Assembly (NCBI RefSeq): GCF_902459465.1 | Contig: NC_047063.1 | Span: 18,910,001 to 18,974,000, forward strand | Length of the DNA: 64,000 nucleotides | Reading direction: 5' to 3' | Origin: Asterias rubens | Taxonomy: Eukaryota | Shown here: in pieces, positions 13,667 through 38,506 of the stretch | Numbering within the stretch: position 1 is the stretch's first letter | Layout of the letters: each line of letters begins with the position of its first letter | The notes under the pieces: generated by a model | The model's database searches: none | Seen by the model: the letters and a program-made list of their open reading frames with translations, nothing else | Told to the model about the DNA's origin: nothing | Position numbers and translations under genes: made by a program

Positions 13667-16600
13667 TCAGCGGTTCTTTTTGTGGCCTAGATACCCACTG
13701 GTCTTGTCTAGCTCCTTCTGTGCGCGGTTCAACTCCCTCCAGGATTGTCTGATGAGGATGGGTGGGACAATAACCCAGGGGGCATTGAACCCGATCACAT
13801 ACAGCCAGAAGTAGTAGGGGTGGAACCTCGGCCCGTGGGCGAAGTCCTCAACGTACTCGGTAATGAAGTAGATGAGAACACCTGTTATATTATTGATAAA
13901 GAATGATGGAGATTAGTAGGAGTCGAGTTGATATAAATAATAGGCGAAATAAACTAATTAAACTACTCTAATTTTGTATTCTATATTTTCACTAATTTTC
14001 TTTTAAAACTGCATATCATTCATGGACAAAAAAACACATTTCAAGGGACATTTTCCACCATGTCAACCTTTAAACCAACATTGTGTTAACGTTATTTTAA
14101 TCTTACAACATTGCTGTGTACATTGTACACATTTTAACATGAAATAGAACTGCACTGAAAAAAAACTAGTGTTAAAGCTGTGTTGTCACATAATATATAC
14201 CTAAAAGAGAGTCCAAATATATACCCAAGTGTTAAACTAACACTAATTTCTGCCAACGTTACATTTGTGCTATTATAACATACTATGAAGTTAATTTTGG
14301 TTCTCTCTTAGTTAACTATAATGCGACAACACCCACGGTGTAAATTCAACGCAACAGTTTTTGCAGTGTAGCACTCAGTGTTTATGTAAATAAGAACATT
14401 ATGCAAATCCTACTGTTTCTTCTTCGTTGAACCGATACATCGTCGGAATAATGACAAAGCACAGTACAGATAATTCAAACACTTTTGCCTACCATAAAAC
14501 TGGCCAATCGAAACAGCCAGTTGCATCACGTGGCGCATCGAACTTCTATTGAGAAACGCCCACACCGTGATGAAACATCCGGGACCTTCTAGCCATGCAG
14601 TTATATTCTCCAAAACAATGGTGCACGTATCGTTTCTGTACAAAACACACACAATTAGTTGAAACAATATTCTCACTTTTATTTGTTACAATTCATCATG
14701 TTTGTCCACTTTGCGAATAAATCGTGTGTTAAAGGCACTGGACACGGTTGGTAGTTGTCGGTTGGTAGTTGTCAAACACCATTATTCCCACTTGGTGGTG
14801 TATTCCACATAAAACTAATAAATAACAAACCTGTGAAAGTTTGGGGCCAATGGGTCATCAAAGTTGCAAGAAAATAATAAATAAAAATAAAAAAATATAG
14901 CCAGTAATTGTGTTGCTTTCAGATGCCTTGCAAAGACTTCAGGTGTGGAGTCTTTGTCTTGGTCATATTCAAATTATCAAAAGTGAAAATTACCTCAAAA
15001 ACTAGGTTATTTCATCAGAGGGAGCCGTTTCTCACAATATTGTATACACAGCTAGCTAGCCGTTACTCATTACCGAGTTATGCTATAAGATAATACACAT
15101 TTTGAGTAATTACCAAACATTTCCAGTGCCTTTAAAGTCTGTTGGAAATTGTCACACGGGGTTATCTACAGGTGACAAGTTCAAGGGAAAAAGGTTATAT
15201 CAGAAGACAGTGATGTATATTTACTAACACTGGTTAATGTTATTTAAATGGAAATAATGTTTCACAGACATTTATTAATAGACATTTCTGAGCAGAAAAA
15301 AAAAACATTTTGTGGGAAAACCCGACATTCAAAATACTTACGAAACATATCGGCTGTCCCCCTTGGCGTACTCTTTCCCTAAACCAACCGAGATAAAAAA
15401 GAAGGGGAGAAATAAACCAAGATAACCAATTCAGTCAATAAGTTGTATCAACGGGCAAAATACATGTATATGATATATAAATAATAATATAAAATATTGC
15501 CTATAAATAGAATACCTTATTATAGTGGTCATCGGAAAGTTCAATAAAGACCCTATTGTTCTTCTGGTACTAGAACATAAGTCGAATGTAGAGTTTGGTA
15601 CAATTCCATGTTTTTTTAAGCAGAATGTTTGGTTAAAATGCTGCTTTATTATCGAAAAGCAGGAAACCAGTCAGTCCCAGTCACAATGGTTTGCAATGGT
15701 ATTTTGGCTGGTACCTTACCCTGTAAGCAAACTTGCTTTTGCTTAGCTATTTTCTGTACTGAATGTATTTTTTCCAAACCTCGGCTTCCTTTTGATATTG
15801 GAATCACCATACAAAATGCTCCAAAATTAATGGCGACACCCGCGGAGTAGCAGGAAATGGTCACGGTTTTTTCCCCCCAAAAAAAAATCCCTAGCAGAAG
15901 CTGGACTTCATGATTTGTAATAAAATCCACAGCTCAAATGTAGATATTATTAAACTTTCTGGTTCGTACCAACTTCTTGTAATGTACATGTATATTGTAT
16001 GAATGATTTTACCCCATAACCTCTGGATTTAGTTTGGTGTGGTTCCCACAGTTCGGTTCGGCCATATCGATTTGACCATACAAGTAAGGATTTAAACCTA
16101 ATCCGTATGTAAATGTGATATCCGCACAAAATAATATAAATGAAATCAATTTCAAAAGACCTCTTTTCCCAATCCAGTTATAAGAACAATATTAATTTCG
16201 TGAACACGCATAGAATCCCTAACGCACTGTAAAGATAAATTAGTCAAAACGACGTAAGTTAGTCAAGACATCATGTTGACTAATAGTCAGCCAACTTAAG
16301 TCGTTTTTACTAATTTATTTTTACAGTGCGGTACAAAATAGCTTTGAGATTAGTATTAGATTATTTTATCTGACACAATACAACTAATATTGTGTATCGG
16401 TTCTTTTTATAGTGCAATCTATACGAGACGGCACTAAGTGGACCAAAGTTCTTGTACCAACAATGCAGTATGTCCAAACTTAGGTTCAGACAATGGGCCT
16501 TATCAAGAACCCACCAATATAATAATCTCCTCATGTAAATATAGCACAGAGGGAACATCTTTTAGAGATAATTTTTTTTAATATCACTGCCTTAATTCTG

Positions 16601-18226
16601 TTTAATGACTTGATGCTTATTTTTGTCCGTGTTTGGCCTTTAAGTCGGAACAATGCTCCTTTGCCATTCTAATAAAAAAAGATTGAAACAATCACACCCT
16701 TGAGTTAGTAAAGCACTGATGAGCAAGAGATAAAAACTAAATGCAATCTGGAGTTACCTTAATCAGATTCAGGAGCGTATAATTCATAACTAAGCCCCCC
16801 CCCCCAAAAAAAAAAGAAGTTGGTCGTACGGGTTTAAACAAAAAAAAGAGGATGGGGGTCTTTTTCAAATAATTTCTCTCAAAGGTGGACGCTCAGCATT
16901 TTAATTCTAACTGGCTACCAATTTCAGTTTAAAGTCACCACTTACTTTTTAAATATCGTAAAAAGTTCTTAAAAGATTAAATTTGGCGGGAAAAACAGAA
17001 AGTTTGTCTTTTTGAAAAACAAAAACGTTAAAAAAAAGAAATATATTAAAAAGGGTGCGGCAAAAAATAAAAACAGAATGAGGGAGAGGACAATCAACTG
17101 GTATCTTTTGTCATGAAACCTTATCTGGCGGGATTGTGGGGGAAAATATTCCACTTCAAAAAGGATCGCATTTTAAGTTTTTCAGAAAAAAAATATGAGA
17201 TTGTTTTTATCACACAGTGTATTGCAGAAGATGCAGTTAAACAAATTGCCCGACGTTTCGACCTTAGCAGAATCTTTAAAGGAATGTCATATCAGGGCTG
17301 TATGCTTCGTTTTTGAAAGGGCAAGGGCACCAAGGCATTTTTTTCTTGGTAAGGGGCAACCTATAATGTAAAATTGCAAATTTGTACTGGAGCATTTCAA
17401 GGGCACCAAGGCCGAACCAGGGGACCTCCATGGGGACACGGAGGCAATCACCTTCGTTGCCTGTTTTATAAGTCCCTGGCTTTGGAAAGCAGTTTGCAAC
17501 AGCTATATTCAAATATTTTCTAAAAATGTATACATTCAAACTGCCATTTTTGTCCACTATCCCACAATTGCGTTCTCTTTTATATAAAAAACACATCTTA
17601 AGTAATAACTTCAGGAAGGAACCGTTCAAATGTGTTTGAAATGCAGAAGTCACCCCGCTACCACATAATAATCCGCGGTTCTCTCTGATCAATCTTCAGA
17701 AACGACTACAGCAAGTCTAGTAGTGTCAGACGGCCTCGTTCAGCCTTCTGAAACACCGGCCGGTAACGCGGTGTACATGTGTTAGCCATTGTACATGTGT
17801 AAGTGCACTTGTCTGTGTACGTTACATGTCCAGAGACAGAGAGGCTAGCTGGCCACACGCAGACAGCATGTATGGCATACAGTCTAGTCTACTAATTCTA
17901 CCTCCATGGTCTTACTTACATATTTGAGCTAGAATATCGTTGTGTCCTGCCACTGTACCGCTATTCAGCGTCAGATATCCCTCAAGGATCAAGTGGATGC
18001 TACCACTCATTCCAAACCAGCATAGAACAGCCCTCTCGTCCAGCCGAAGTCGGCGACCGAATCGATCCTTTCCAACCACCATCCATGTTATCAAATAAAA
18101 CACAACAAAGAAGGCTACAACAACGGAGAGAATTACTTCGACTGAGCGTGAGTTATCCACGTAATGGGGTAAATGAAGGTCCAGTGGATAGTATGGATGG
18201 GAAACGTTGTCAGTAGAAGGTGCCAT
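13667..18226 (-). CDS. EBP: EBP-family sterol delta8-delta7 isomerase, copy 1 (most divergent paralogue), 233 aa
   Basis: Exons 17920-18226, 15342-15378, 14493-14635, 13667-13881 (702 nt). Motifs HPYYP, IHLILEG, WKEYAKGDSRY, LENIT, GQFYG and FNAPW; C-terminal KKNR* is a KKXX ER-retrieval signal. Confidence 0.95.
14733..15131. mobile_element. Kolobok-type MITE copy, EBP1 intron 2
   Basis: TTAA|AGGCACTGGACAC...TCCAGTGCCT|TTAA. Confidence 0.78.
17290..17480. mobile_element. CAGGG...CCCTG MITE family (other copies 9075-9240 reverse, 1545-1685 and 55920-56030)
   Basis: Recurrent AAGGGCAAGGGCACCAAGGCATTTT...AAGGGCACCAAGGC strings. Confidence 0.6.
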
Positions 18227-20424
18227 CTTTGAATTGAGAAAGAACTCGCCCTACCTACCCCTGCTATACCAAAAACACTGATGGGAACTTTTTGAAGTAC
18301 GGTACTTTTCACCTTGCCTTACAGAGCAATGGTTGTGACGTAATCTGCGAACCAACACTGCACTCTCTCGTCGTCATGTACTACACGGCTTGTGTACGTG
18401 TATTGTTATAACAAGGCGTGATCTTTAGATACAACCCCCCTCTACTGTTCGGATCTTCTCTATACTACTTATGTACACAGGCACTGTACACATTGTACAC
18501 GTGAGCTATGTGGATATAAATAAATAGTGGGACGATTTTCAAAACCATAAACTTTACCCAGTCTCTTTAATAGTGTTCCATTTCTACCCTGCGTAGAAAA
18601 ATACATTTGCAATTAACCGACTGTTATCATAATCGACTTCCTTTGTTGAATCAACGAAATGAACGGCATGCATGGGGATCTTGAACTTGAAATAAAGTTT
18701 AAACTTTGTTTGTAATCTATTTATATGTATACAGTTTTTCTTTGGGACTTGGACGTTGGCTAGTTGTGAAGATCTCCGCTGGATCCGGAAAAAAACTTCT
18801 CTCAGCTCACGGCAACGTGTTCCTTCTACCTCCATGCTTTAAGTGGTCGCATTATGATTTAATTCTACAGACGACGATGGCAAGTTGTTCAAGACCTGGA
18901 GCAGTTCGTGTTAGCCTGAACATCTGACGTCACATTTCAAGTGAGCAGTTCGTTAAAATAGCGCCCTCTGGATTTGTTTTATGCCAAATTGTTAGGTTGT
19001 ATAGACTGGTCCCCTTGTCATCTTCCGCAAGGATAAAGACAGCTGGGCCTACTTGCTTTTCAGAACCAATCATTGATAAACGTGCAGCGACGTAAGCTTT
19101 CCATATATGTGTTTTGATTGGTCCGAGGTGGTGTGGGTGGTGCAGCTGAAGCAGATCACTCGGACCAATCAAATAATACATTCTTCGAGTTGGGTGATGA
19201 CTGGTCCATAAGGGAATGAAATCTTTACATGAAAACTTTCTTTGGAACAGAGAGAGTCTATGATTAAGTCTGTCAGTGTACAGATTCAGCGGATTGTGGG
19301 GCATTGAATAGGATCTTGAAACAGACCCTGATATTAATTGATATCATTGCTTAAAGTGACCAAAGAGCAAGGACCTTTCTCTTTTCCCTTTCCCTTTCTA
19401 TGAAGTGGTAGGACCAAAGATTATCCAATCAAACTCGTTGTTACATCATTTGAAAGAGCATTGACTAAGCTTTGCTATCCCGAGTGAAACGTTTTGGTTG
19501 GCTTTGCAGTTCGTGAGTTACACTAACAACAACGCATCGCGACAGCAAACTAATAATATTGACAAAAACAAACTCGCCGTTACAAACAGAAATCTACCGG
19601 ATGTAATTTTTAACGAGATCTTGACAGGTCCAATGTTTCATTTTCATTGATTTCATTTCACTTATTAATTGCACAGGTAAAAATTCAAGTACAGACTATA
19701 AGAACAGTAAAAGAAAACAAAAATATGCACCTATAGGCGAGAGAGAGAAACAAAAGTAGCGCCCTTAAAAAGTGAGCTAAATTTCTATCGAGTTAACCTC
19801 CTGTTCCGACCTCTAGAAAATAAAATTTACATTAATAGTTATGTCAGGAACAAAAACTAAACTTTCCTGAATAAAACTTATTAAATAAATGAACCGTTTT
19901 TGAGATAACCATAAAAAACTGTAAAAATTTAGCATCTTTGGGGCCAGATTTCCAGCACTTTTGCCTGCGTAGTAAACAAACCAATGGGTTTGTGACAATT
20001 CAACCAGGAAAGATTGTCCAGATCCACAACGATTAGTTTTGACACGGTTAGCTTTAGTAGTTGGCTGCCGATTGAGGATATCAAAAACATTCTCACTATC
20101 CAAACATTGCTTTCTGCATGTAACCTTCATAACAATGAGTGCTTTGGGACGCCCATCTGGACTGAAGAAGTGAGCAAAAACAAAAATTACTACTACTAGT
20201 TTTATTGTTATTCTATCAAACACTACCTGCACTATACCTGCCGTGGCTGTACGGGCGGAAACAAACCTGACAAAGTAAATAATAATATAATATACAAGAT
20301 TTATAAATAAATGGGCTATTTATTGCTGGTAGTTAATTGTTTCATACAGAATCAAAGAAAATGGCAATGTCAACAAACTTTTTTAGTCGGCACACCTCAT
20401 TCTAGCGGTATCTCTTCCGGAGGG

Positions 20425-20930: not shown

Positions 20931-20940
20931 GGTGCGGCAG

Positions 20941-21241: not shown

Positions 21242-21317
21242 GTTGGACTGATTCCCCTGGGACCATGGCGCACTGATTTTGAAGCATGCAATAAGTGCAG
21301 TAAATGGTGTTTGTTAA

Positions 21318-21704
21318 AGGCAGTGGACACTATTGGTAATTACTCAAAATAATTATTAGCATAAAACCTTACATGGTGACGAGTAATGGGGAGAGGTTGA
21401 TGGTATAAAACATTGTGAGAAACGGCTCCCTCTGAAGTGACATAGGTTTCGAGAAAGAAGTAATTTTCCACGAATTTGATTTCGAGACCTCAGGTTTAGA
21501 ACTTGAGGTCTCGAAATCAACCATCTAAACGTACACAACTTCGTGTGACAAGGGTGTTTTTTCTTTCACTATAATCTCACAACTTCGTCGACCAATTGAG
21601 CTCAAATTTTCACAGGTTTGTTATTTTATGCATACTTTTTTTATGTTGAGATACACCAAGTGAGAAGACTGGTCTTTGACAATTACCAATAGGGTCCAGT
21701 GTCT
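21318..21704. mobile_element. Kolobok-type MITE copy, downstream of EBP2
   Basis: TTAA|AGGCAGTGGACACTATTGGTAATT...GTCCAGTGTCT|TTAA; near-consensus. Confidence 0.85.
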
Positions 21705-21913
21705 TTAACACGGTTCGCCGTTTTGGGACAGAATTTCCGGGAGACAAAATCTTCTACCACACCGGTACACAGTGATGACATAGTTACACTGTTAACTACA
21801 GGATGGCGTCCATCTTGGCAGCTTTTTTGTTAAACTATACTAAGTTTTTCCAAAATGTGCTTGGGGTATTTTTCTAAGGAGACGTGACTTTGTACTCCGT
21901 TTGACTCACTCGT

Positions 21914-24006
21914 CTATTTTCGTTTTGAGATACCACCTTTTACTGGGTTGAATCCAGTCTCTTTGTCCAGGAGCCGCTGGGCCAGGTTGAGTTGCTTCCA
22001 GGACTGATAGATTAGGATTGGAGGCACCACCAGCCATGGTGAGTTCATCCCGAAGAAGTAAAACCAGAAGTACAGAGGATGGAACCGGGGACCGTGGGAT
22101 AGACCGTCGAACATCTCGGTGAAGAAGTACAGAAGTGTACCTGAGTGTGTGGGATCGAAAGAACAATTTATTCAATCATAATTGCCTATAGACACCATTT
22201 CAAAATCTCTCGTTCAACTTTTGAAAATTAGTCATACATTGCATCACAGGGACATGGACGTTTTCTTTAAGGCAATGAGTAGGTATACATATTCAAAACG
22301 GGGACCTTTAACAAAAGAGGACAATAGAGTCCTTGGTTCGGGATCCCGAAGTCCACAGTTGGAAAAGTGTAGAAAACCAATGGGATCTGTTGCCCCCCCC
22401 CCCCCCAAAAAAAAAAAGTGTAAACGACAGAGGGAAAATGAGGTCCACGGTTGTAAACAGCATTATTTTTACCCGGTAACAACAGACTGATTAAAAACAC
22501 TAAATGACACTATCTCACCGTAGAATTGACCAATGGAGACTCCGAACTGGAGCACGTGACGCATTGGGTGTCTGTTTAGGAACGCCCACATGATGAAGAA
22601 ACATCCGGGACCTTCTATCCATGCCGTCAGTCCCTCCATGATTATAATACAGGCATCGGACCTGCAAGATAATGTGTACTTTTTATTATTTTAAATTATA
22701 GGCGGGAAAGTGTTTCGCAGTTATTTGATGCAATATCCCGTGTCCAAAATCGTCACCGACGCCCTAAACTTTTGCATATACGTCATAGTACGTATGTACA
22801 ACAGTAAATGCAATAGGAGAAGACGGCGCGTCGCGGCGTTTAAAGGCACATTTTCAGTGAGCATTGTGAGAAATGTCTTTCGATAAAAATAAATTGTATA
22901 CTTACTGCACATATCTGCTATCTCCCTTTGTGTACTCTTTCCCTGTAATAACAAAGGAAACGCTAACAATGTATTCTGCCAGTCTTGCTCATTATTGTGA
23001 CACCCCAATGTGTGTAATTACTTCGCTATGTTGAACCCTATCGTGAAAAGTGGTCACCCAAAGTTCAAAGAATGTTGCATCAATGTTGGGTAACAGTAAA
23101 AACAAAACAGAAATTATAAATGACATAAGGATTGCGGTCACACCATGTAATGACTATCTAGGCTATATGAGTTGGGGTGGTTCTGAAAAGATCCGTTGGT
23201 TTCAACTCGATGTTTCGATCAGTACTCTGATCGTCTTCTCTACGCCCTCTCCAGACAGCTCATCAAGTTTGTTAACTCTGCGCCATAAATAGCGAGTGAA
23301 AGTCTGTACATAAAATTAAAGTTTAACGTTTTTTATAAATTTTGTAGTGAATCCTGCGTTATTTTGTTCGGGGTTGCTGTTGATGTACTAATTCCAAATA
23401 CTGTTTCAATACAAGATCTTGAATACCATTATTCACGTATTTGGGGGGAAATGTATACTTTTCACAAATAAAACCTTAATGAAAATGTTGCAGTTTGGGC
23501 AGACATTAATTTTGTTCCACTTGCGGCAAAATCGTGAATTAATTCGGAGGAAATTTTGCAAAATATGTAATGTCCCTTGAGAGACAAGGTAAAGGTTTAT
23601 TGTATGGGCTGGAGTTGATTACTTGGCTTATATCAATTAACTTTCAAATATAGTTGATTTTTATTTTCATGTTTAATTGATATATTTTTTTTGTAATAAA
23701 CACTGACTCACACATTTGTGCCAATAAGTTGTTGTCTCCGGGAAAGTTGCTGCTATTCATACTGATGTACCCCTCCATGATCACGTGGATGCAACCACAT
23801 AACCCCCACCAGCACAACGCAGCCTTCTCCCATGATCCTAGGAGACGGTTAAACCGGTCCTGCTTCACGAACTTCCAGAAACACACGAAGATAACAACGA
23901 AGGAGCCCAGAGTAATTGGTGTGACGGCAAGCCCGAGACTGTTTTCCTTGTAGTGGGGCACTTCCAAGCCCAGTGGATAGTACGGATGAGACACGTTTGA
24001 TGTCAT
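21914..24006 (-). CDS. EBP: EBP-family sterol isomerase, copy 2, 233 aa
   Basis: Exons 23712-24006, 22906-22942, 22519-22661, 21914-22140 (702 nt). Motifs HPYYP, IHVIMEG, WKEYTKGDSRY, MEGLT and MNSPW; ends ISKRK*. Confidence 0.94.
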
Positions 24007-26198: not shown

Positions 26199-26232
<34 letters not shown>

Positions 26233-26545
26233 GAATAACAACTTCTTGAATCGTAAAACTCATAATCATAGACACCAATGTTTGTAATCAGAGAAATTGG
26301 CTGTAAGTATNNNNNNNNNNNNNNNNNNNNNNNNNNNNNNNNNNNNNNNNNNNNNNNNNNNNNNNNNNNNNNNNNNNNNNNNNNNNNNNNNNNNNNNNNN
26401 NNNNNNNNNNNNNNNNNNNNNNNNNNNNNNNNNNNNNNNNNNNNNNNNNNNNNNNNNNNNNNNNNNNNNNNNNNNNNNNNNNNNNATCAAACAAATCAAT
26501 AAACAAACAAACAAACAAACAAATAAACAAACAAACATACAAACA
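26185..26545. other. Assembly gap (175 N, 26311-26485) flanked by (AAC)n and (AAAC)n microsatellites
   Basis: N run counted directly; AAC repeats about 26185-26235, AAAC repeats 26486-26545. Confidence 0.98.
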
Positions 26546-27469: not shown

Positions 27470-27630
27470 ACTTATGGTGTTGGAAGAAAACCAAAGGGAA
27501 CTATTCAAGAGAAAACCCACGCAATCAGGTAGGGGCTGAATCTCAATCAACATAGTGCCACAGAGAGGATTCGAACCGGGACCTATACATAGAGGTGGAA
27601 GGCGAGGGAAGCTACCACTATGCCAGCCAG
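27470..27630 (-). mobile_element. tRNA-derived SINE
   Basis: On the minus strand, A box TGGCATAGTGG (27615-27625) and B box GGTTCGAATCC (27567-27577), followed by a non-tRNA body. Confidence 0.7.
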
Positions 27631-27672
27631 ACAACCCACAGATAAGTTTTTTCGAAGAGACATCTTCTTTAA

Positions 27673-28054
27673 AGACACTGGACACTATCGGTAATTGTCA
27701 AAGACCAGTCTTCTCACTTGGTGTATCTCAACATATGCATAAAATAACAAACCTTTGAAAATTTCAGCTCAATCGGTCATCGGAGTTGCGAGATAATAAT
27801 AATAAAATTTAAAAAAAACACCCTTGTCACACGAAGTTGTGTGCGTTTAGATGGTTGATTTCGAGACCTCAAGTTCTAAATCAGAGGTCTAGAAATCAAA
27901 TTCGTGGAAAATTACTTCTTTCTCGAAAACTGTGTCACTTCAGAGGGAGCCGTTTCTCACAATGTTTTATACCACCAACCTCCCCATTACTCGTCACCAA
28001 GTAAGGTTTTATGCTAATAATTATTTAGAGAAATCACCAATAGTCTCCACTGCT
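27673..28054. mobile_element. Kolobok-type MITE copy, 45 bp downstream of the EBP3 stop
   Basis: TTAA|AGACACTGGACAC...CCACTGCT|TTAA. Confidence 0.85.
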
Positions 28055-28098
28055 TTAAACCCAACATTATCTTCTACATCATTTTCACTCTTAAAAAC

Positions 28099-31000
28099 TC
28101 ATCTAATTTTTTTTGAGACACCACCTTTAACCGGGTTGAATCCAGTCTCTTTGTCCAGAAGCCCCTGGGCTAGGGTGAGTTGCTTCCAGGACTGATAGAT
28201 TAGGATTGGTGGCACCACCAGCCAGGGTGAGTTCATCCCGAATACGTAAGTCCAGAAGTATATAGGGTGGAACCGGGGACCGTGGGATAGACCATCGAAC
28301 ATCTCGGTGAAGAAGTACAGAAGCGTACCTGGGTGTGGGATAACAAAAGATAGTCTTGACTTAGTTTTCGAATGACGTTAGCTTCAGCGGAGCAGGACTT
28401 TTTATGACAGCAAACATCGCTGCAGGAACTAGGTTTGTGGTGAGAGTGCGCGGCATTGTTTTGGTTTGTTTAGCACACAAGTCAGTGGCTAGTGGCTAGT
28501 ACCACACGAGGCAAAGGATAGTGGCTAGTACCACACTAATAGTATAATGGCTGGTGGCTAGTACCACACGAGGCAGTGGCCAGTGGCCAATACCACACTA
28601 GAAGTGGCTCAGAGTGGCTAGTACTACACTAGTTAGTGGCTAGTGGCTAGTACCGCACGAGGCACACCTATTTGCTAATACCGCACTTATAGTAATAATG
28701 GCTACTGGCTAGTACCACACGAGGCAGTGGCTAGTGGCTAGTACCGCACTTTAGGCAGTGGCTAGAGGCTTGTACCATACCAGTAAGCGGCTAGTGGCCA
28801 GTGGCTAATACCACACTAGCCAGTGGCTAGTGGCTAGTGGCTAATACAACACTAGCCAGTAGCTAAATGGTACAGCTTGTTTCCGCGTTCGCGTGTAAAG
28901 AAGCCTTGGATACTTTGAAAGTCGTATGAAATAATAATTGTACTGCTCGAAGATAAAAGACCGGATGAAAACAATGACAGTAACTTACCGTAGTATTGGC
29001 CAAGGGAGACGCCAAACTGGAGTGCGTAACGCATTGGGTGTCTGTTAAGGAACGCCCACACAATGACGAAACATCCGGGACCTTCAAGCCATGCCGTCAG
29101 CCCCTCCATGATAATAATACAAGCATTTGCCCTGAAATATCAACCATTATATTTTTCTATTAACTTCATATTCTTTTAAAAAGAATTCGGCACACAGTCA
29201 GAGTATGTCATGAGAAATATAATTGGCCATTGGAAAATGTGACAAGAACTACAAGCATTTTTGTCAATACATTAGAGTTGATTTGGTATTGGACATTCAG
29301 TTCAAATAGGTTTGTACATACAGCGAATGTACACTTTTGCTTTTTATTTATATTGGACATTAAACATTCACATACATTTTGTACAGTAACAGCAGGCCCG
29401 AGTAAAAGTGTACCATTGTATACTTACTGCACATATCTGCTATCACCCTTTGCATACTCTTTCCCTGTAATAACACAGAAATATTTTGAAATATGTTAAT
29501 TACACTGATAATTATTTATGTGACTTGACGCGAATCTGAGCAGTGGGACCCGTGAAAGTGCGCGATTTTGTCTCCGTTACATGTTAAAGGCAGTGGGCAC
29601 TATTGGTAATTACTCAAAATAATGATCAGCATAAAACCTTTCTTGGTGACGAGTAATGTGGAGAGGTTGATGGTATAAAACATTGTGAGAAACGGCTCTC
29701 TCTGAAGTGGAGTAGTTTTCGAGCAAGAAGTTATTTTCCACGAATCTGATTTCGAGACCTCAGATTTAGAATTTGAGGTCTCGAAATCAACCATCTTAAC
29801 GCACACAACTTCGTGTGACAAGGTTTTTTTTCTTCTTTCATTATTATGTTGCAACTTCGACGTCCAAATGAGCTCAAATTTTCCCAGGTTTGTTATTTTA
29901 TGCATAATATGTTGAGATACACCAAGTGAGAACACTGGTCTTTGACAAATACCAATAGTGTCCAGTGTCTTTACAGAATGAGACGTGGTTCCAAGAAAAC
30001 AATGCTGGAATTCGCGCGAGACTTGAAGGCAGTGGACACTATTGGTTATTACTCAAAATAATTATCATCATAAAACCTTTCTTGATTACAAGTAATGGGG
30101 AGAGGTTGGTCGTATCAAACATTTTTCTTTCATTCTTATCTCGCAATTTCGACAACCAATTGAGTTCAACATTTCACAGGTTTGTTATTTTGTGCATGTT
30201 GAGATAGTGAGAAGACTGGTCCTTTCTGAGCAGGGTTAATTATTTACTGTGAATTAGTTATTTACCAGGAAATTCGCCCAAAAGTTCCTGGGATTCTCCC
30301 GGGAAATACCTATAGCGTAAAAAGGGTTTTTGATTGTAGTAGAGAACATACTTGCAATGAGACACATACTTTTAACGAGCTTATTATTGCTAATGCCAAG
30401 ATCATCGGCAGGATAATCATTGCCTGAGGTAAGAAATCTGACGTGGTTATCGTCTGCTAAAAGGGTGACCATCTATTGTGCTTCAAAAATATGAATGATA
30501 TTTTATAGCTCTTTCGGTTCCAATGAGGCGGTTTGATTTAAATCCGTATAGGCATGAAGATGTTTGCATTGACTTGTTATAGATATAAGTAACGTTCATT
30601 TCAATGTAACCTGGAAACAACTTTCAAGAGCGCGAAATGGGTGCGAGGGCTAATACTGCTTTTCTAGGATAACAAATCTGTTGTACCCGTTGAATTTTTC
30701 TTTCTTAAAGGCAGTGGACACTGGTAATTACTCAAAATAATTATTATTATAAAACCTTACTATTGGTAACGAGTAATGGGGAGAGATTGATAATATAAAA
30801 CATTGTGAGAAACGGCTCCCTCTGAAGTGACGTATATAGTTTTCGAGAAAAATGTAACGTTCAACGAATTTGATTTCGAGACCTAAAGTTTAGAATTTGA
30901 GGTCTCGAAATCAAGCATCTGAAAGCACACAACTTCGTGTGACAATGGTGTTTTTTCTTTCATAGTTATCTCGCAGCTTCGACGACCAATTGAGCTAAAA

Positions 31001-31581
31001 TCTTCAGAGGTTTGTTATTTTATGCATATGTTGGGATACTCCAAGTGAGAAGACTGGTTTGTGACAGTTTACATGTTTGCAACTTTGGGAAACCGTGGGT
31101 ATAATGTCGATTGGTTTGTTTTTACGTACGATGCTCCTTCGAGACAAGGATTCGTTTATACCATCATCAATTTTAGAGTTAAAATGATGGCGTTCTATTC
31201 TCAGTGTATTATCATCACCAAAACAAAAACTATCTTTCGGTTTTTGTTTTCTGTCTTTCTTTTTCATTCCAAAAACGGACACTTACATATTTGCGCCAAG
31301 AAGTTGTCTTCGCCGGGAAAGGTTGTGCTGTTCAGGCTTACGTAGCCCTCTACGGCCATGTGGATGCAACCACACAACCCCCACCAGCCCAGCGCTGCCT
31401 TCTCCCAAGAACCCAGGGCACGGTCAAACCGGTCCTGCTTCACGTACTTCCAGACGGCCATGAAGATGAAGAAGAAAATAGTCAAGGCAATGGGTGTGAC
31501 CGCGTTGCCGAGACTGTTTTCCTTGTAGTGGGGCACTTCCATCCCCAGTGGATAGTACGGATGAGACACGTTTGAAGCCAT
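28099..31581 (-). CDS. EBP: EBP-family sterol isomerase, copy 3, 234 aa
   Basis: Exons 31287-31581, 29428-29464, 28989-29131, 28099-28328 (705 nt). Motifs IHMAVEG, WKEYAKGDSRY, MEGLT and MNSPW; ends SKKIR*. Confidence 0.94.
28484..28865 (+). repeat. GTGGCTA-based minisatellite with higher-order units of about 30 bp, EBP3 intron 3
   Basis: AGTGGCTAGTGGCTAGTACCACACGAGGC repeated with variants. Confidence 0.92.
29588..29970. mobile_element. Kolobok-type MITE copy, EBP3 intron 1
   Basis: TTAA|AGGCAGTGGGCAC...GTGTCCAGTGTCT. Confidence 0.83.
30027..30221. mobile_element. Kolobok-type MITE, internally deleted and truncated, EBP3 intron 1
   Basis: AGGCAGTGGACACTATTGG start, with family sequence to about 30221. 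Confidence 0.75.
30709..31068. mobile_element. Kolobok-type MITE copy (right TIR lost), EBP3 intron 1
   Basis: TTAA|AGGCAGTGGACAC start followed by the family body. Confidence 0.8.
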
Positions 31582-33590
31582 GATTACAGGAGTTACAGTC
31601 ACGACGTACGACCAACTTTAAGGTGGCGGCACTTCTGTTCCGAACGACTAGTTGCACCAAGACTAAGTGGTGCACCGAGCTTTCTTGCGCTTATAAGCAA
31701 ACTCCTTGTGTTCAAGGATACCACTTGATGACATGGTAATGTATAGCCCGCATCACAGACGAAGTTCTCAGTATCATACGAACAATTAAATTTATGAGTG
31801 TAGGAGAGATAACATTAATGATTATGAGTTGGAATCTGGCATGTTCCATTCAAGAGGAACTCAAAAAGAGTGGGTTGCTATGGTAAAGAAAATTAAACCG
31901 ACTCCAATGTTCTGAGTAAAATTTATAAATGAATTTTCCCTCATCTTGCAATCTTCGTGGAGTGGGATCTGGACTTAATTATATCTGGTAACGTTTTTTG
32001 TTAAACCTTTGTTATTGATAGCTTTCGGGGAACTCGTTGCACTATACTGTCAGTTTTATTCAGTCATAAGCACAAAACGCCATTAGACAAAAAAAAAACA
32101 GACATCTAATCTTCCATAAACATTTATTATGACTAAAACTACGGCATATTATAATACTTTACTCAAGGTTTGTGCCCCTAATTGCCAATATTTACGTACG
32201 TATTCATTGTTTTCCCGTACTGTAAAAAGGTACGTAAATAATGACAAAATATTTACGGTTGGTGCCCCAAATTTAAAATAATTTATCTAAATACATTATT
32301 TGCGTAAAATACTTAATGATTTGTGTCCCTAAATGCAGATACTTGCTTATTGTTACGCATTTGTTCTACGAAATTATCTCTTAAATCGTCAAATAATTAT
32401 AGCTATAGCACTTTGAGTCGCCCCTCAATGTCATGATGAAGTGCTATTAAAATAGTAACGAAAGCATGTTGCACTTTTCCAAAAGTCGCCAAAACGCATG
32501 CTACCTAATTATAAGAAGAAAAGAACACTAAAAGAAGCGAACTTAATATTATTGGAGTGTTCTTGCAAACACAGCATTCACCACCTATACTGGTGCGGGC
32601 GGAAGGACCTTATAAAAATAAAATAAAACTCTCTGATAGTCGTTCAATTTGATGACATCGTAATTTATTTGCTGGTATTTTGATTGCACCGTGCTCTTTC
32701 TTAAGTAAAACAAAGTAAAATTATGGTATAATGTCAACAAACTTTTCATTCTTGTGAATTTTTTTGATGACGTGTTCTATTTAAAGCTTTATCGAACAAA
32801 TAAAATCAGAGAGAACTGAGTATACTGTCAACAAACTTTTTAGTCGTATGAATACTTTGATAATAATAATAATAAATAATAAAAGGTATTTATAATGCGC
32901 TTTTCCAAAACATGATCAAAGCGCATAACAAAGAATAGGATAAATTAAAACTTGCAAGAAACAAATCATTAATCTACTATTTAGGAAAGAAATGAGTGTT
33001 TAAGCTGAGTTTTATCGGAAGAAGAACGGAGTCCTGGACGGTGAGTTTGGCGAAGATGAAACATTAGACAGATAAGATTAAAAACATAGAAGAGTGTTGA
33101 ATTTGATGCGCTTCTCCATGGAAAGACGGTGTAGTTTTGCGATAAAGAGATATTAAAAGTTTTATGGTGCAAACAAAATCAGAGAAAACTATTCATAAAA
33201 ACAACTATTTGAAAGTCAGCAATTATCAACTGTAGGTGGTTTTGTTTTTGTTAATTAACGCCTGTATGATGGCTCACTCTGATTTTTTCAGTTGAAATTG
33301 AAAACTCACCAGTGATTGTCTTTCAACAATCACAAAAAAATTAATTCTCACTATTCGATCGAGTACTTGTCTTGAAGGTGGCAAGCATACTAAATAGTTC
33401 TATGTTTTTACTGTATGCATGCGAACATTTGATTAATAATACCCTTTATGGGATCTCATTAACTTTGATTAATTGGATTGGATTGGTTTGAATTAAATCG
33501 AATCGAATCGAATCAAATCGAATCAATGGGTACCTTTTGTAGGACACCAAACACAATGTCCACAGATTTACATGACGTTAAATGTGTTGT

Positions 33591-33835
33591 GTAACGCATG
33601 TAAAAGAACCCAGTGCACTTATCGAAAAGAGAAGGGGTACGCCCCGATGTTCCTGGCTGTGGCTGCTATATGCGCCGTTATCACCTTGTAAACCCTTATA
33701 ATGTGCTAAATAATTGGGTCTCAGAATTCATCACTGCAATAACCTATCTGTCTGGAAGTTTGTAATTTACTCAGCGCCTTGAGTACCTTGTTTGGTAGAT
33801 ACGTGCGCTATATAAGACTTCGATATTATTATTAT
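33591..33835 (+). mobile_element. Interspersed SINE-tail-like repeat (other copies near 1990-2150, 3410-3560 and 36284-36350 reverse)
   Basis: Shared strings GTAACGCATGTAAAA.AACCCAGTGCACTTATC and GCGCCTTGAGTACCTTGT...GTAGATAC, ending in ATT repeats. Confidence 0.7.
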
Positions 33836-34663
33836 TATTGTATTTTGCTTTGCTTAGCCGCAGATCGAACTTTATTACATTGTTGGCCAAGAAACCCTTG
33901 AAATAAATGTTGTCTTAAAAAATAGTTCACCATACTTGACGTAAAGATAATGGGTGCATTTCAGGCGGTGACTGTTGGATGTAAGAAGTGCTATACTATG
34001 TACTTAGACAGGTCCCCTGTCTTTAGGATAAAAACAGGTACTTTCTTTTCAGCACCAGTGATTTTATTTAATACAAAGTACTGTCATTGGATAAACGTGC
34101 AGTAACGTGAGCATTACATGTTGCATTTTGATTGGTCTGAGGTTGATGTTGATGCAGCTGAGCAACATCACCTCGGACCAATCAAAACACAGATATGGAA
34201 AGCTTGCTTTCGGCGTCTGCATGCAATGTCCACACGGGTTTTGTGCAGGCTACATGTACATGTTTTAATAATCAATGTTACTATAGGATTTTAGTTCGTA
34301 CGTTTTTCCATGTGAAATGGATGTAGATGACAGGTGATTGACTAGACTTGATTCAAGTACCAGTCTCGTGTGAGAGGTCCCCCAACGTATTATAAAACCA
34401 CACGTAGCATACACAGTACAGTGCGCCGTCACTGTCAAAATGTTGAACAGGTTTGGGATCGCAGAGCATCACAAAACAGTATTTCTCTGGGGATGGCACG
34501 GGATTGGGACTTGAGTCAAGTCTGGGTGATTACGGACGGGGATTGACCTAGGCTCAGAGGCCACTCTTTGGCGTTTACTCGTGAGCCTCGAAGTGTGACG
34601 TCAGTTGTTCAGGCTGTACTGTGTATCACTATAATATATCCCATCAAGCAGCATCTACTACCA

Positions 34664-34880
34664 TACCGAAAGGTTTGCGGTAACACCATGTAATGACTGT
34701 CTCTATAATGAGTTGAGATGGTTCTAAAAAGAACCGTTGGTTTCAACTCGACGTTTCGATCAGTATGCTCTGATCGTCTTCTGGAGAAAGATTCTAACTC
34801 ATTAGGGATTGTCATTACATGGTGTTACCACAAACCTTTCCATATCGTATTTCCACCATTCAAAGTTTCAAATCCTACTT
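34664..34880. mobile_element. Hairpin repeat family with a one-sided extension, Penelope-like (other copies 5853-6040 and 23128-23240)
   Basis: Inverted arms GAAAGGTTTGCGGTAACACCATG / CATGGTGTTAC..CAAACCTTTC; a shared 3' tail TCGTATTTCCACCAT.CAAAGTTTCAAATCCTACTT in two copies; internal GACGTTTCGATCAG motif. Confidence 0.6.
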
Positions 34881-35671
34881 GGCATCTACTACCTTCCTTT
34901 TTTGTGACGGTTGGCCTTTCCAATGTGAAGAAGTACCACGACAGAATACAATTCTGAACAAGAAATTCAATTTGAAAACGCTATTTATTGTGCGGGTATA
35001 TATTGACATTGCTCATTTAATACAACATTAAATAGAGTGTTATTTTGGAATAAAGTGGATTCAATCTAAATATAGTTTTTTTTAGTAGAACAATCATTCT
35101 TAAAGCTGACAACTATCGTACCAAAAGAATTATAAATTGAAAGTGAAAAATTATAGCCAACTCAAGGGGTGCAAAATCAAAGTATTTTATTTTAATACTC
35201 CCAAATAAAAAAATAACATGGTGTGCTTTTAGCTTTAGTGTGAGAGTCCAAGTGTATTGGCGTCATTAGTAGGACATTGTTTTTATTAGGGTTCATTTTT
35301 TTTATGTGGGAGGATGAACAATTTGTCATTGTCAAGTAAGGCTGATGATAATATCTAGCTTGCATTGTGTGGAAGGTTAAAATACCACCCTGAATACAGC
35401 AATATTGAGACACTATTTGTGTACAATCTAGACTGTTTTATGAGGAATATCAATTCCTACCTGCAGTGGCTCTGAGTTCTTTCTACTTGAAATGAATGAT
35501 TTGCTTGTATAGCCCCGTACCAAGAGTGGCTTCTTCCCGTTTGGGGGCGAACTTTCATACAATAAAACTAAAAAACACCGACACAAAATGGTGCAATATA
35601 ATAATTATCTTCTTTTTAACATGCAAATTATCTTCTATACACAATCATATAGCAATAACTATAATATCGAA

Positions 35672-36283
35672 GTATTATAATAATATTGATAATTAACCAT
35701 TCTTATATAGCGCATAACACATAGTAATAAAACATGTACCTAAGCGCTCTTGAGAAAAATACAACAGAATACAACGACAAGATGTACTGGGTAACAAACA
35801 AAATGGAATAATTAAATGTTAAATAAGTTCGTCTTTAAAGCAATCTTGTACTTAACAATGGAGTCTATGTTTTTTAGTTGTTCTGGGAGATTGTTCTATA
35901 AAGTTGAGGCAGTGTGAACGAAGCTGCGTTCACCATATGACTTGGTCATCACTGGTGGATGGAATAACAAACAACTTTTTCTTATTAGAACGAAGATTTC
36001 TAGAAGGTGTGTACAATGTTAACAGCTCGGTCAAATAAGGAGGCGCAAAATCATAAAGACATTCATAAGCTAACAACACTATTTTGAATGTAATGCGAGA
36101 GTGAATTGGCAGCCAGTGTAAGTCTCTTGGGATAACAGACACAGATTCATGTTTCCTAATACGATAGATAAGACGAGCTGCAGAGTTCTGCACAACCTGC
36201 ATCTTCTGCACTTGACGAGCCAAAATCCTAGAAAGGAGGCTATTGCAAAAATCAAGGTGACACACTACAAAAGCATGAATCAA
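35672..36283 (-). mobile_element. 5'-truncated L2/CR1-group LINE 3' end
   Basis: ORF2 C-terminal motifs LDFCNSLL, VQNSAARL, LHWLPI..RITFKI and APPYLTELL; 3' UTR ends GCGCTATATAAGAA plus ATT-type repeats. Confidence 0.85.
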
Positions 36284-36357
36284 ACAAGGTACTCAAGGCG
36301 CTGAGTATTATACAAACTTTCAGAAAGATAGGTGATATTGAAGTGATGGAAAACAAC

Positions 36358-38506
36358 TCATCTATGTTTTTTTGAGAACTCTTTTACTGGGTTGAATCCA
36401 GTCTCTTTGTCAAGGAGCCCCTGGGCCAGGTTAAGGTGTTTCCATGACTGATAGATTAAGATTGGAGGCACCACGAGCCAAGGTGAGTTCAAGCCGAAGA
36501 CGTAGCCCCAGAAGTACAGAGGATGGAACCTTGGGCCGTGGGTTAGGCCGTCGAACATCTCGGTGAAGAAGTACAGAAGCGTACCTGGGTGTTGGAAAGC
36601 AAAAGGGTTTACTATTTTAAAAACCATTATAGCTGTTTTCCCCCAGTGGAAATAGTCTGGTTCCTTTTTGAACATAATGTAAACATTCATTACTCAGTTA
36701 ATGAGTATACAGGGAACGTGACCAAGATTGTGGCTCCATGATAAGACTTAAAACATAAGACACAAGAAACTGTATATACTCTCCTAAAGAAGAAATCACA
36801 TTGCTCGCACATTTTTCAAAGCACAACAAAACATCAAAAAGTTAAAACAATTACAAAAAGACAAAAACATGTAGTGAACATAATGTATAAACATTGACTT
36901 CTTGATGTGAACATATCCAAAGGTAAAAGACCGGTTGAACGATTAAACTCACCGTAGAATTGACCAATGGAGACTCCGAACTGGAGCACGTGACGCATTG
37001 GGTGCCTGGTAAGAAACGCCCACATGATGAAGAAACATCCGGGACCTTCTAGCCATGCCGTCAGTCCCTCCATGATTACAATGCATGCATCAGACCTGAA
37101 ATATCAACCAATTTTTCGTATTCATTGACAATGTTTTTTTTTTTTTAAGAATAACTTATTTCCAATAAAAACAGTAGGCGCCTGGGTTCTTATAAAGAGC
37201 TCTCACACAGGGCGTATCAAAAGCGATTATTATATATTTTTTTTTTCCCGTAGGCTGCAAAAGCTACGTTTTTATTTCAGAAACTTATGCCGTGCTGCAA
37301 CAACTGGGGTAATAAAGTTGATTCTCTTGGTATTGATATGTGACAACGCCGACACGGTGTTAATTTCACGAACGATACTGGGGATAAATAACACCATGTT
37401 GGTGATGTCCCATATACAGATACCAAGAAGAATCATTTTAACACCCCAGTTTTTGCAGTGTTACACCATGCAAAAAATGATGGTTTTACAAGGTGCTATG
37501 TGGCGCAGCATGGCCGATTAGACCAAGAACACCGGAGCGAACCCAATATAGAGATCAGTGGGCGAACCCCTTCTGGCTAGTGTTACTGGGTTCCTTTTCA
37601 TTCGTTATACACAAAATCATGTGCACTTTTGCATCGAGTTTATTTTGATTTCGGTGATAGAAACGAGCAGTTGGTGATTTGGAAGTCATCTAAACACTCT
37701 AATGTTCCGATATTGAGATAGTAAACCGGCTGTAAGATTCATGCTGGTTTGAAATTGATAAAAAGTTAGATTTCTGTTTCAGGTGGAGGTTTTTTTTTCT
37801 AGATTAGAATCGATCCATTTGTCTTTACTTACTGCACGTATCTGCTATCTCCCTTGGTGTACTCTTTCCCTGGGATGAAACATGAAAACATTATTATAAT
37901 CACAAGCATAAATGTATTTTATGGCAACTTTAATTTTAATAGCTTCATTTTTGTAATGCTTTCTGTAATTTATGCGGATTTCTTAATTGTACCAGATACC
38001 CTACTTTTGTCATATTAGATGGATGGACTAACACAAACAACCATTATTTATAATCATCTCTGCAACTTTTTGTTTATGGTGATTCTGCTTAATTACACCT
38101 TTTTAAAGATAATTTGTACAACCATAATTATTAAGTTCATTTTTTGCAGTTTCAGCGTTTATAATAATGTTTTACCAATCGTGTTGGTTGTCCTCTTTTC
38201 CAAACACTTACAGATTTGCGCTAAGATGTTGTTTTCCCCAGGGAAAGTGCCGCTGTTCATGCTGACGTACCCCTCCAACACCATGTGAATGCAACCACAT
38301 AACCCCCACCAGCACAGCGTAGCCTTCTCCCATGATCCTAGAAGACGGTTAAACCGGTCCTGCTTCACGAACTTCCAGAAACACACGAAGATAACAACGA
38401 AGGAGCCCAGAGTAATTGGTGTGACGGCAAGCCCGAGGCTGTTCTCCTTGTAGTGGGGCACCTCCAAGCCCAGTGGATAGTACGGATGAGACACGTTTGA
38501 AGCCAT
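36358..38506 (-). CDS. EBP: EBP-family sterol isomerase, copy 4, 233 aa
   Basis: Exons 38212-38506, 37833-37869, 36953-37095, 36358-36584 (702 nt). Motifs IHMVLEG, WKEYTKGDSRY, MEGLT and LNSPW; ends SKKHR*. Confidence 0.94.

What the first reader, a model, noticed from the sequence alone, without database searches (positions are those of the whole stretch)
13667..38506. Four intact tandem EBP (sterol delta8-delta7 isomerase) paralogues: a candidate sterol/saponin-tailoring expansion
Seen: four same-strand genes with matching exon structure (295-307 / 37 / 143 / 215-230 nt) and open frames. All keep the residues equivalent to human EBP H76, E80, E122, T125, N193 and W196. Established: EBP is normally a single-copy housekeeping enzyme; sea stars use delta7-sterols as major membrane sterols and make steroidal asterosaponins with a delta9(11) double bond. 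Inference: if this is a sea star, the expansion may supply delta7 sterols (saponin self-resistance) or new double-bond isomerase activities for saponin biosynthesis.
Basis: partly seen in the sequence, partly recalled or inferred. Interest (0 to 1): 0.82.

Follow-up and report, generated by a model that had tools for sequence, protein, structure and literature searches.

The report
Four working sterol-isomerase genes in starfish
The common starfish carries four intact, selectively maintained copies in a row of the sterol double-bond isomerase gene EBP, an arrangement shared by other sea stars but not found in the sea urchin or feather star examined; this makes them concrete but unproven candidates for the unusual sterol chemistry of sea stars.

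Summary
The window is Asterias rubens: copy c4 is 100% identical to XP_033647706.1. Four intact EBP genes lie on the minus strand between 13667 and 38506. Their coding exons measure 295-307 / 37 / 143 / 215-230 nt, with GT-AG introns throughout. All four keep H76, E80, E122, T125, N193 and W196, and also D108, W101, Y104 and Y111.

The assembly gap (26311-26485) is intergenic, in simple repeats between c2 and c3, and touches no exon.

All four genes are already annotated in RefSeq as "EBP-like", and each has a one-to-one orthologue in A. amurensis. dN/dS between the two species is 0.06-0.13.

Acanthaster planci and Patiria miniata each carry three linked copies. A sea urchin and a crinoid show one.

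The tree gives two starfish clades. Clade A (c1) is one gene per species, sits beside BAP1 as in the crinoid, and keeps ancestral residues. Clade B (c2-c4) is starfish-specific, was re-duplicated separately in each lineage, and carries fixed changes (F69W, T118I, L152F, L32T) in the helices that hold the catalytic residues. An FMO gene lies next to clade B in the three genera examined.

RNA evidence is good for c1, indirect for c4, ambiguous for c3 and missing for c2.

The link to saponins or delta9(11) chemistry remains an untested hypothesis. I found no paper describing this expansion.

The parts
13667..18226 (-). EBP copy c1 (clade A, ancestral type), 233 aa, = XP_033624091.1
   Evidence: Exons 18226-17920, 15378-15342, 14635-14493, 13881-13667. 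Pfam EXPERA/EBP on exons 3 and 4. Orthologue in A. amurensis with dN/dS 0.126. An RNA-run contig ends exactly at the exon 1 donor, with depth 1502 against about 14 in the flank.
21914..24006 (-). EBP copy c2 (clade B), 233 aa, = XP_033645996.1
   Evidence: Exons 24006-23712, 22942-22906, 22661-22519, 22140-21914. dN/dS 0.087 against A. amurensis. Exon 1 had no depth in the four runs laid. The intron 3 joint was seen, but with only 23 nt on one side.
26311..26485 (.). Assembly gap, intergenic between c2 and c3
   Evidence: Only N run in the window. Flanked by simple repeats. No exon within 1.6 kb. No gene is called in the corresponding A. amurensis interval.
28099..31581 (-). EBP copy c3 (clade B), 234 aa, = XP_033647705.1
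   Evidence: Exons 31581-31287, 29464-29428, 29131-28989, 28328-28099. dN/dS 0.118 against A. amurensis. RNA-type runs hold 0.25-0.28 of its words, but intronic repeats may account for part of that.
36358..38506 (-). EBP copy c4 (clade B), 233 aa, = XP_033647706.1
   Evidence: Exons 38506-38212, 37869-37833, 37095-36953, 36584-36358. 100% identical to P0223. AlphaFold model matches human EBP 8W0R with TM 0.82/0.89. dN/dS 0.057. RNA-type runs hold 0.24-0.28 of its words.
42123..47241 (+). FMO-like monooxygenase gene, head-to-head with c4 (context; conserved neighbour of clade B)
   Evidence: Pfam FMO-like, E 2e-30, on the last exon. Exons mapped by tblastx with the A. planci FMO locus. FMO lies next to the first clade B gene in A. 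planci, A. amurensis and P. miniata.
112..8032 (-). BAP1-like ubiquitin C-terminal hydrolase gene next to c1 (context; ancestral neighbour)
   Evidence: Pfam Peptidase_C12 and UCH_C on two ORFs. The single EBP of the crinoid Antedon also lies next to a Peptidase_C12/UCH_C gene.

Best explanation
The region holds a real, conserved family of four functional genes for EBP-type sterol isomerases. These are ER membrane enzymes that move the ring double bond from delta8 to delta7, by protonation at C9 from His76 and deprotonation at C7 through Glu80/Glu122, with Trp196 stabilising the carbocation.

c1 is the descendant of the ancestral single-copy gene. It keeps the ancestral residues and the ancestral neighbour (BAP1), and it most likely serves de novo sterol synthesis.

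c2-c4 belong to a sea-star-specific clade B. This clade arose by tandem duplication before the Asterias and Acanthaster/Patiria lineages split. It was then duplicated again separately in each lineage, with some gene conversion. All its copies are kept under purifying selection.

Clade B retains every catalytic residue but has fixed changes in the helices that carry them. The most likely reading is therefore that the paralogues still catalyse acid-base double-bond migration in sterols but have divided the work by substrate and/or tissue, in an animal whose sterol pool is dominated by delta7 sterols.

Shown here: gene structure, family membership, fold, catalytic residues, conservation, selection and synteny. 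Inferred: the enzymatic activity of each copy, the division of labour, and any link to delta7 sterol supply.
For: Gene models are intact and identical to the RefSeq proteins.

Family, fold and catalytic residues:
- Pfam EXPERA/EBP hits on the exons.
- Best PDB sequence hits are human EBP only.
- The model of c4 matches 8W0R/6OHT at TM 0.78-0.89, rmsd 2.2-2.7 A, 41% identity.
- H76, E80, D108, E122, T125, N193, W196, W101, Y104 and Y111 are invariant in all 17 echinoderm sequences. Their roles are documented in PMC6549186.

Selection and age:
- dN/dS among the clade B paralogues in the window is 0.14-0.25.
- dN/dS between A. rubens and A. amurensis orthologues is 0.126, 0.087, 0.118 and 0.057, with Fisher p from 1.5e-3 to 2e-11.
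- Paralogue similarity is limited to exons and dS is 0.34-0.77, so the duplicates are old.

Phylogeny and conserved sites:
- All asteroid EBPs form one clade (100/99). Clade A (96/92) has one gene per species and clade B (100/99) has 2-3.
- AU tests reject one-to-one orthology between the Asterias and valvatid clade B copies.
- Clade B alone changes L32T, F69W, T118I and L152F at sites at least 90% conserved in 131 other EBPs. W67 and I116 of c4 sit 7 and 4 residues before H74 and E120 in the same predicted helices.

Synteny: the order FMO, clade B copies, clade A copy is conserved, and the urchin and crinoid loci hold one EBP.

Transcription:
- c1 is transcribed.
- Clade B cDNA fragments spliced across exon junctions occur in JGI data from another asteroid (P0290, P0291).
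Against: No enzymatic data exist for any copy.

Expression of c2 was not detected in four runs. The evidence for c3 and c4 is only the share of 31-mers held by runs whose RNA nature is guessed.

The clade A stem (0.15) and the whole asteroid stem (0.54) are also long, so c1 is not a slow-evolving 'pure housekeeping' copy.

Lineage-specific grouping of clade B copies can be produced by gene conversion as well as by independent duplication, and mosaic dS suggests that conversion happens.

The claim that the substituted residues line the pocket rests on helix periodicity, not on measured distances.
Confidence: 0.6

Rival explanations
1. Dosage or redundancy only. All four enzymes carry out the same canonical delta8-to-delta7 step, and the copies are kept because sea stars need high flux to delta7 sterols or because expression is partitioned without any biochemical change.
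For: All catalytic and H1-helix residues are invariant. Purifying selection is strong and similar on all copies. Gene conversion between copies is typical of families kept similar.
Against: Clade B has fixed, clade-wide replacements at four positions that are otherwise at least 90% conserved across animal EBPs. Clade B has been kept distinct from clade A since before the split of the sampled asteroid orders. Pure dosage duplicates rarely stay 55-58% identical and intact for that long.
Confidence: 0.2
2. Neofunctionalised steroid-tailoring enzymes. Clade B copies, perhaps together with the neighbouring FMO, act in asterosaponin or polyhydroxysteroid biosynthesis. Possible activities are forming the delta9(11) bond from a C8/C9 carbocation by loss of H11, or hydrating 5,6-epoxides as mammalian EBP does together with DHCR7.
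For: The expansion is restricted to asteroids among the echinoderm loci seen. The FMO neighbour is conserved next to clade B in three genera and absent next to the urchin and crinoid EBP. Fixed changes lie in the catalytic helices. Sea stars make delta9(11) steroidal saponins and delta7 sterols (PMC6627624; PMC9236903). The chemistry is plausible from the EBP mechanism (PMC6549186; the extension to delta9(11) is my inference).
Against: There is no biochemical, co-expression or tissue evidence. The correlation rests on a single evolutionary event. FMO lies 3.6-6.5 kb away and is not a known steroid enzyme. Published work explains sea-star delta7 sterols without EBP. No other saponin-type genes (P450, sulfotransferase, glycosyltransferase) are in the window.
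Confidence: 0.13
3. Non-catalytic role. Some copies act like vertebrate EBPL or as binding proteins for cationic amphiphiles, with no isomerase activity.
For: EBP binds many amine ligands through the same residues. The EXPERA family includes members without isomerase activity (my knowledge of EBPL and TM6SF2).
Against: The full proton-relay set and the H1 residues needed for catalysis are invariant. The sequences group with EBP proper, and their only solved-structure matches are human EBP.
Confidence: 0.05
4. Artefact or decaying copies. One or more copies are assembly duplicates or young pseudogenes.
For: An assembly gap lies inside the array. c2 transcripts were not detected.
Against: The gap is intergenic. 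Introns and flanks of the copies are unrelated. All four have intact one-to-one orthologues with GT-AG introns in a second species, and dN/dS is 0.06-0.13.
Confidence: 0.02

Closest known systems
Human EBP (3-beta-hydroxysteroid-delta8,delta7-isomerase; PDB 6OHT, 8W0R)
   Same: Same Pfam family and same fold (TM 0.78-0.89). About 41% identity and similar length (233-234 aa against 230). All residues shown by mutagenesis to be needed for isomerisation are present. The coding part is in four exons.
   Different: Four linked genes instead of one. Clade B carries L32T, F69W, T118I and L152F at otherwise conserved transmembrane positions. Activity is untested.
Vertebrate EBPL and other EXPERA proteins (TM6SF2, TMEM97/sigma-2)
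   Same: Same superfamily (EXPERA). An example of an EBP duplicate retained with a changed or lost activity.
   Different: The starfish copies group with EBP proper and keep the catalytic set. TMEM97 (7M93) matched the model only at noise level. Whether EBPL lacks those residues was not checked here.
Sea cucumber oxidosqualene cyclase duplication (LSS to parkeol synthase plus lanostadienol synthase; PMC9236903)
   Same: Duplication of a core sterol-pathway gene in a saponin-producing echinoderm class, linked there to delta7/delta9(11) products and to self-resistance.
   Different: That case is proven biochemically and concerns another enzyme and another class. Here only the genomic pattern is shown.
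Amphioxus EBP paralogues
   Same: An independent lineage-specific duplication of EBP in a deuterostome (two well-separated amphioxus branches).
   Different: I have no evidence for a tandem array or for a conserved neighbour there. It shows that EBP is not strictly single-copy in animals.

Membership tests
EBP (sterol delta8-delta7 isomerase, EXPERA superfamily) | EXPERA/EBP domain (Pfam PF05241) | tested here: met
   Exons 3 and 4 of c4 and c1 hit PF05241, three of the four above the gathering score; c1 exon 4 scores 25.6 against a cut-off of 25.7. The full-length proteins carry PF05241 in the database.
EBP (sterol delta8-delta7 isomerase, EXPERA superfamily) | Catalytic and ligand residues H76, E80, E122, W196, N193, T125 | tested here: met
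   Aligned to 6OHT for c4. Invariant in c1-c4 and in 13 other echinoderm EBPs. Roles are described in PMC6549186.
EBP (sterol delta8-delta7 isomerase, EXPERA superfamily) | H1 lid helix residues W101, Y104, Y111 | tested here: met
   W99, Y102 and Y109 of c4 are invariant across the 17 sequences. Their requirement is stated in PMC6549186.
EBP (sterol delta8-delta7 isomerase, EXPERA superfamily) | Five-transmembrane-helix EBP fold | tested here: met
   The AlphaFold model of c4 (pLDDT 74.7, pTM 0.71) matches 8W0R_A at TMq 0.82 / TMt 0.89 and 6OHT_A at 0.78 / 0.87. No other fold scored below E = 1. Only c4 was modelled.
EBP (sterol delta8-delta7 isomerase, EXPERA superfamily) | Groups with EBP proper in a family tree | tested here: met
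   The asteroid sequences nest inside the echinoderm EBP clade (99/96), among named deuterostome EBPs. EBPL sequences were not included, so separation from EBPL rests on residues and on PDB and database hits.
EBP (sterol delta8-delta7 isomerase, EXPERA superfamily) | C-terminal di-lysine ER retrieval signal | tested here: inconclusive
   c1, c3 and c4 end in a KKxx pattern. c2 and its A. amurensis orthologue end in SKRK, which does not fit the strict pattern. The motif rule is from my own knowledge.
EBP (sterol delta8-delta7 isomerase, EXPERA superfamily) | Delta8-to-delta7 sterol isomerase activity | not testable with these tools
   Needs yeast erg2 complementation or an in vitro assay.
Metabolic gene cluster for steroid saponins | Several different pathway enzymes co-located and co-expressed | tested here: not met
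   Only EBP copies and one FMO are linked. The other neighbours are BAP1-like and BORCS6-like genes. Co-expression was not testable.

The most novel reading that the evidence does not exclude
Clade B EBPs are a sea-star invention that redirects the C8/C9 carbocation of the EBP reaction to new outcomes: the delta9(11) double bond of asterosaponin aglycones, or epoxide opening toward 6-oxygenated steroids. Together with the conserved neighbouring FMO they would form the core of the first animal steroid-saponin gene cluster.
Probability: 0.1. Interest if true: 0.85.

Novelty: new member of a known kind. Interest (0 to 1): 0.5.

Why it matters
How sea stars build their delta7-dominated sterol pool and their delta9(11) steroidal saponins has been debated since the 1970s, and no sea-star enzyme beyond lanosterol synthase has been characterised. 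A sterol double-bond isomerase that is single-copy in a sea urchin and a crinoid has been triplicated or quadruplicated in sea stars. The copies have been kept under selection across distant sea-star orders and have changed in the helices that carry the catalytic residues. That gives four short, easily expressed candidate genes with a ready-made assay (yeast erg2 complementation plus GC-MS). If the copies differ in product, this would be a second, independent example in echinoderms of a core sterol gene duplicated to serve defence chemistry or self-resistance. If they do not differ, it is an ordinary dosage family.

Tried and rejected
- The exhaustive representative search with exon 1 alone returned mostly exon-sized ORF fragments from unspliced gene calls. 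It served only to reach a full-length urchin EBP (P0010), which then led to the annotated starfish proteins.
- The first attempts at reference syntax failed.
- Literature searches for EBP in starfish, asterosaponin genes and related terms found no report of the expansion. Table S18 of Li et al. 2018 lists EBP only as present.
- Rfam found nothing in the window.
- A look-up of the A. planci clade A protein found no record, so its neighbours were not seen. P. miniata supplied the order instead.
- The single read-laying run (6 kb limit) could cover only c2 and part of c1. It did not show c2 exon 1. The c2 intron 3 joint has only 23 nt on one side and may come from a paralogue, so I do not count it as proof of c2 expression.
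- The word shares for c3 may be inflated by an abundant intronic repeat.
- Holothuroid and ophiuroid EBPs did not appear among the listed hits, so copy number in those classes is unknown.
- I considered and rejected assembly artefact and pseudogene readings.
- I did not try to measure distances in the model, because no coordinates are returned.
Full report
**What is there.** A six-frame ORF list showed four sets of EBP-like exons on the minus strand. I rebuilt one copy by eye from the sequence. tblastn with that copy then found exactly four complete sets of four exons, and nothing else above noise in the 64 kb. Enumerating GT/AG boundaries gave one homologous open model per copy:
- c1: 18226-17920, 15378-15342, 14635-14493, 13881-13667 (233 aa).
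- c2: 24006-23712, 22942-22906, 22661-22519, 22140-21914 (233 aa).
- c3: 31581-31287, 29464-29428, 29131-28989, 28328-28099 (234 aa).
- c4: 38506-38212, 37869-37833, 37095-36953, 36584-36358 (233 aa).

The only N run (26311-26485) lies in simple-repeat DNA between c2 and c3, more than 1.6 kb from any exon. It therefore has no bearing on any reading frame.

**Identity of the genome and of the genes.** A full-length sea urchin EBP was reached through an exon 1 search. It led to annotated starfish proteins. c4 is 100% identical to an Asterias rubens RefSeq protein on a 25.66 Mb chromosome. [quoted passage not shown] The genes themselves are thus already annotated; what is not described is the pattern they form. 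Pairwise identities are 88.8% (c2-c4), 81-82% (c3 against c2 or c4) and 55-58% (c1 against the rest).

**Family membership.** Exons 3 and 4 hit Pfam EXPERA/EBP. Each large exon of c4 finds human EBP in the PDB, and no other chain below E = 0.2. After allowing for the +8 offset of the 6OHT chain, H76, E80, E122, T125, N193 and W196 align to identical residues. In an alignment of 17 echinoderm EBPs these columns are invariant, as are D108, W101, Y104 and Y111. The roles of these residues are documented in PMC6549186: His76 is the proton donor, Glu80 and Glu122 the acceptor relay, Trp196 provides cation-pi stabilisation, and the H1 aromatic residues are also required. An AlphaFold model of c4 (pLDDT 74.7) superposes on human EBP at TM 0.82/0.89 and rmsd 2.2 A, with no other significant fold match.

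**Are all four functional?** Similarity between the copies stops at the exon borders, and dS among c2-c4 is 0.34-0.77, so these are old duplicates and not assembly artefacts. dN/dS among the three clade B copies is 0.14-0.25.

Asterias amurensis has four one-to-one orthologues in the same order and orientation. From its DNA I rebuilt the four coding sequences. All match the annotated proteins and all have GT-AG introns. The values against A. rubens are:
- c1: dN/dS 0.126.
- c2: dN/dS 0.087.
- c3: dN/dS 0.118.
- c4: dN/dS 0.057.

Pooled, there are 50 synonymous and 16 non-synonymous differences, where neutrality predicts about 3.5 times more non-synonymous than synonymous. Fisher p ranges from 1.5e-3 to 2e-11. 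Every copy, including c2, is therefore under purifying selection.

**Evolutionary pattern.** In a maximum-likelihood tree of 37 EBPs, all 14 asteroid sequences form one clade (100/99) inside an echinoderm clade with urchins and a crinoid (99/96). Two subclades follow.
- Clade A (96/92) has one gene per species and contains c1.
- Clade B (100/99) has three genes in each Asterias species and two each in Acanthaster and Patiria.

The Asterias clade B copies group together (99/95), and so do the valvatid ones (91/86). AU tests reject trees that pair c3, or c2 plus c4, with either valvatid clade B gene (p below 1e-4; the groups were named after seeing the tree).

Gene order supports separate histories. 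In Asterias all copies point the same way, whereas in Acanthaster and Patiria the second clade B gene is inverted. Gene conversion also plays a part. dS between c2 and c4 is 0.14 in the first 60 codons but 0.75 in the next 43. c2 and c3 are unusually similar in exon 4. c4 shows two to three times the dS of the other orthologue pairs.

**Which copy is the original?** Three observations point to c1.
- The single EBP of the crinoid Antedon lies next to a Peptidase_C12/UCH_C (BAP1-like) gene. In the window the same kind of gene lies next to c1.
- At four positions where 131 other animal EBPs are at least 90% identical (L32, F69, T118, L152 in human numbering, read through the 230-aa hamster protein), clade A and the urchins and crinoid keep the ancestral residue. 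All ten clade B sequences have changed, to T (V or I in the valvatid B2 genes), W, I and F respectively.
- The clade B stem is longer (0.34 against 0.15).

In the c4 model the changed residues lie in TM1, TM2, TM3 and TM4. W67 is 7 residues before H74, and I116 is 4 residues before E120, in the same helices. By helix periodicity they should face the same side as the catalytic residues. This is an inference, not a measured distance.

**Neighbours.** An FMO-like monooxygenase gene (exons 42123-47241, plus strand) lies head-to-head with c4. An FMO gene also lies next to the first clade B gene in A. amurensis, A. planci and P. miniata. It is absent from the 10 kb flanks of the urchin and crinoid EBP. 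The order FMO, clade B copies, clade A copy is conserved. The earlier scan note s1-151173 had flagged the FMO. I confirm the gene and add that the linkage is conserved, but the spacing (3.6-6.5 kb) does not suggest a shared promoter.

**Expression.** Only one read-laying run of 6 kb was allowed, and I used it on c2 plus the 5' part of c1.
- c1: one run has a 332-nt contig that ends exactly at the exon 1 donor site, with depth 1502 against about 14 in the flanking DNA. Another run has a 965-nt contig whose length fits a full spliced c1 mRNA. c1 is clearly transcribed.
- c2: exon 1 had no depth in any of the four runs. The predicted intron 3 joint (22140/22519) was seen in two runs, but with only 23 nt on one side, in a stretch nearly identical among c2-c4. 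c2 expression therefore remains open.
- c4: two runs guessed to be RNA hold 0.24-0.28 of the words of the c4 stretch, close to its exonic share.
- c3: the same runs hold 0.25-0.28 of the words of the c3 stretch. That stretch contains copies of an abundant 390-bp repeat, which may explain part of the share.
- Other asteroids: spliced clade B cDNA fragments exist in JGI data (P0290, P0291).

**Interpretation.** Sea stars have delta7 sterols as major sterols and make delta9(11) steroidal saponins (PMC6627624; PMC9236903). The current published scheme derives sea-star lathosterol from cholesterol by 5-alpha-reduction and a Rieske C7-desaturase and does not mention EBP. Li et al. 2018 record EBP only as present. 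I found no paper that reports the expansion.

The data fit best with a family of active isomerases in which an ancestral-type gene is accompanied by a sea-star-specific, repeatedly duplicated clade with an altered cavity. That points to division of labour by substrate or tissue. Pure dosage is the main rival. A direct role in saponin or polyhydroxysteroid chemistry is chemically conceivable, because the EBP carbocation could lose H11, and because mammalian EBP with DHCR7 hydrates sterol epoxides (the latter from my own knowledge). The asteroid-specific FMO linkage adds to its appeal. But it rests on one evolutionary event and no functional data, so I give it about 0.1-0.15.

**Verdict.** The genes are new members of a known family. 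The notable part is the conserved, selected, asteroid-wide array with a derived clade.

Noticed in passing
window 14762-15135, 21310-21708, 27669-28060, 29582-29973, 30701-31069: A roughly 390-bp interspersed repeat (67-90% identical copies) sits in introns of c1 and c3 and downstream of c2 and c3. Contigs of RNA-type runs cover the copy at 21250-21850 at word depths up to about 1.5 million, so it belongs to a very abundant, transcribed repeat family (SINE-like). There was no Rfam match.
   Followed up: partly
window 42123-47241 (+): An FMO-like monooxygenase gene lies head-to-head with c4. An FMO gene is likewise next to the first clade B EBP in A. amurensis, Acanthaster planci and Patiria miniata, but not next to the urchin or crinoid EBP.
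   Followed up: partly
window 112-8032 (-): A BAP1-like ubiquitin C-terminal hydrolase gene (Peptidase_C12 and UCH_C exons) lies next to c1. The crinoid Antedon has the same kind of gene next to its single EBP, although in a different relative orientation.
   Followed up: partly
window 43500-44620: Long low-complexity tandem repeat with strong negative GC skew (-0.25 to -0.31 over 42-46 kb). It gives 130-360 aa ORFs of repeated Pro/Ser/Ala/Leu units in several frames on both strands, and it lies inside an intron of the FMO gene. It looks like a minisatellite, not a gene.
   Followed up: no
window 53630-54412 and 57313-57594 (+): A 260-aa serine-rich ORF without a Pfam hit is followed by an ORF with a borderline hit to the BORCS6 C-terminal helix (34.5 bits, cut-off 35). 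This is probably a BORCS6-like gene.
   Followed up: no
window 36358-38506 against L006 10001-12626: c4 differs from its A. amurensis orthologue at dS 0.16, two to three times the value for c1-c3 (0.05-0.08), and exon 1 is only 94.9% identical. Within A. rubens the first 60 codons of c4 and c2 are nearly identical (dS 0.14). This suggests a gene conversion between c2 and c4 in one lineage.
   Followed up: partly
window 21914-21930 (c2 C-terminus): c2 and its A. amurensis orthologue end in SKRK rather than the KKxx-type ending of c1, c3 and c4. ER retrieval might therefore differ for this copy.
   Followed up: no
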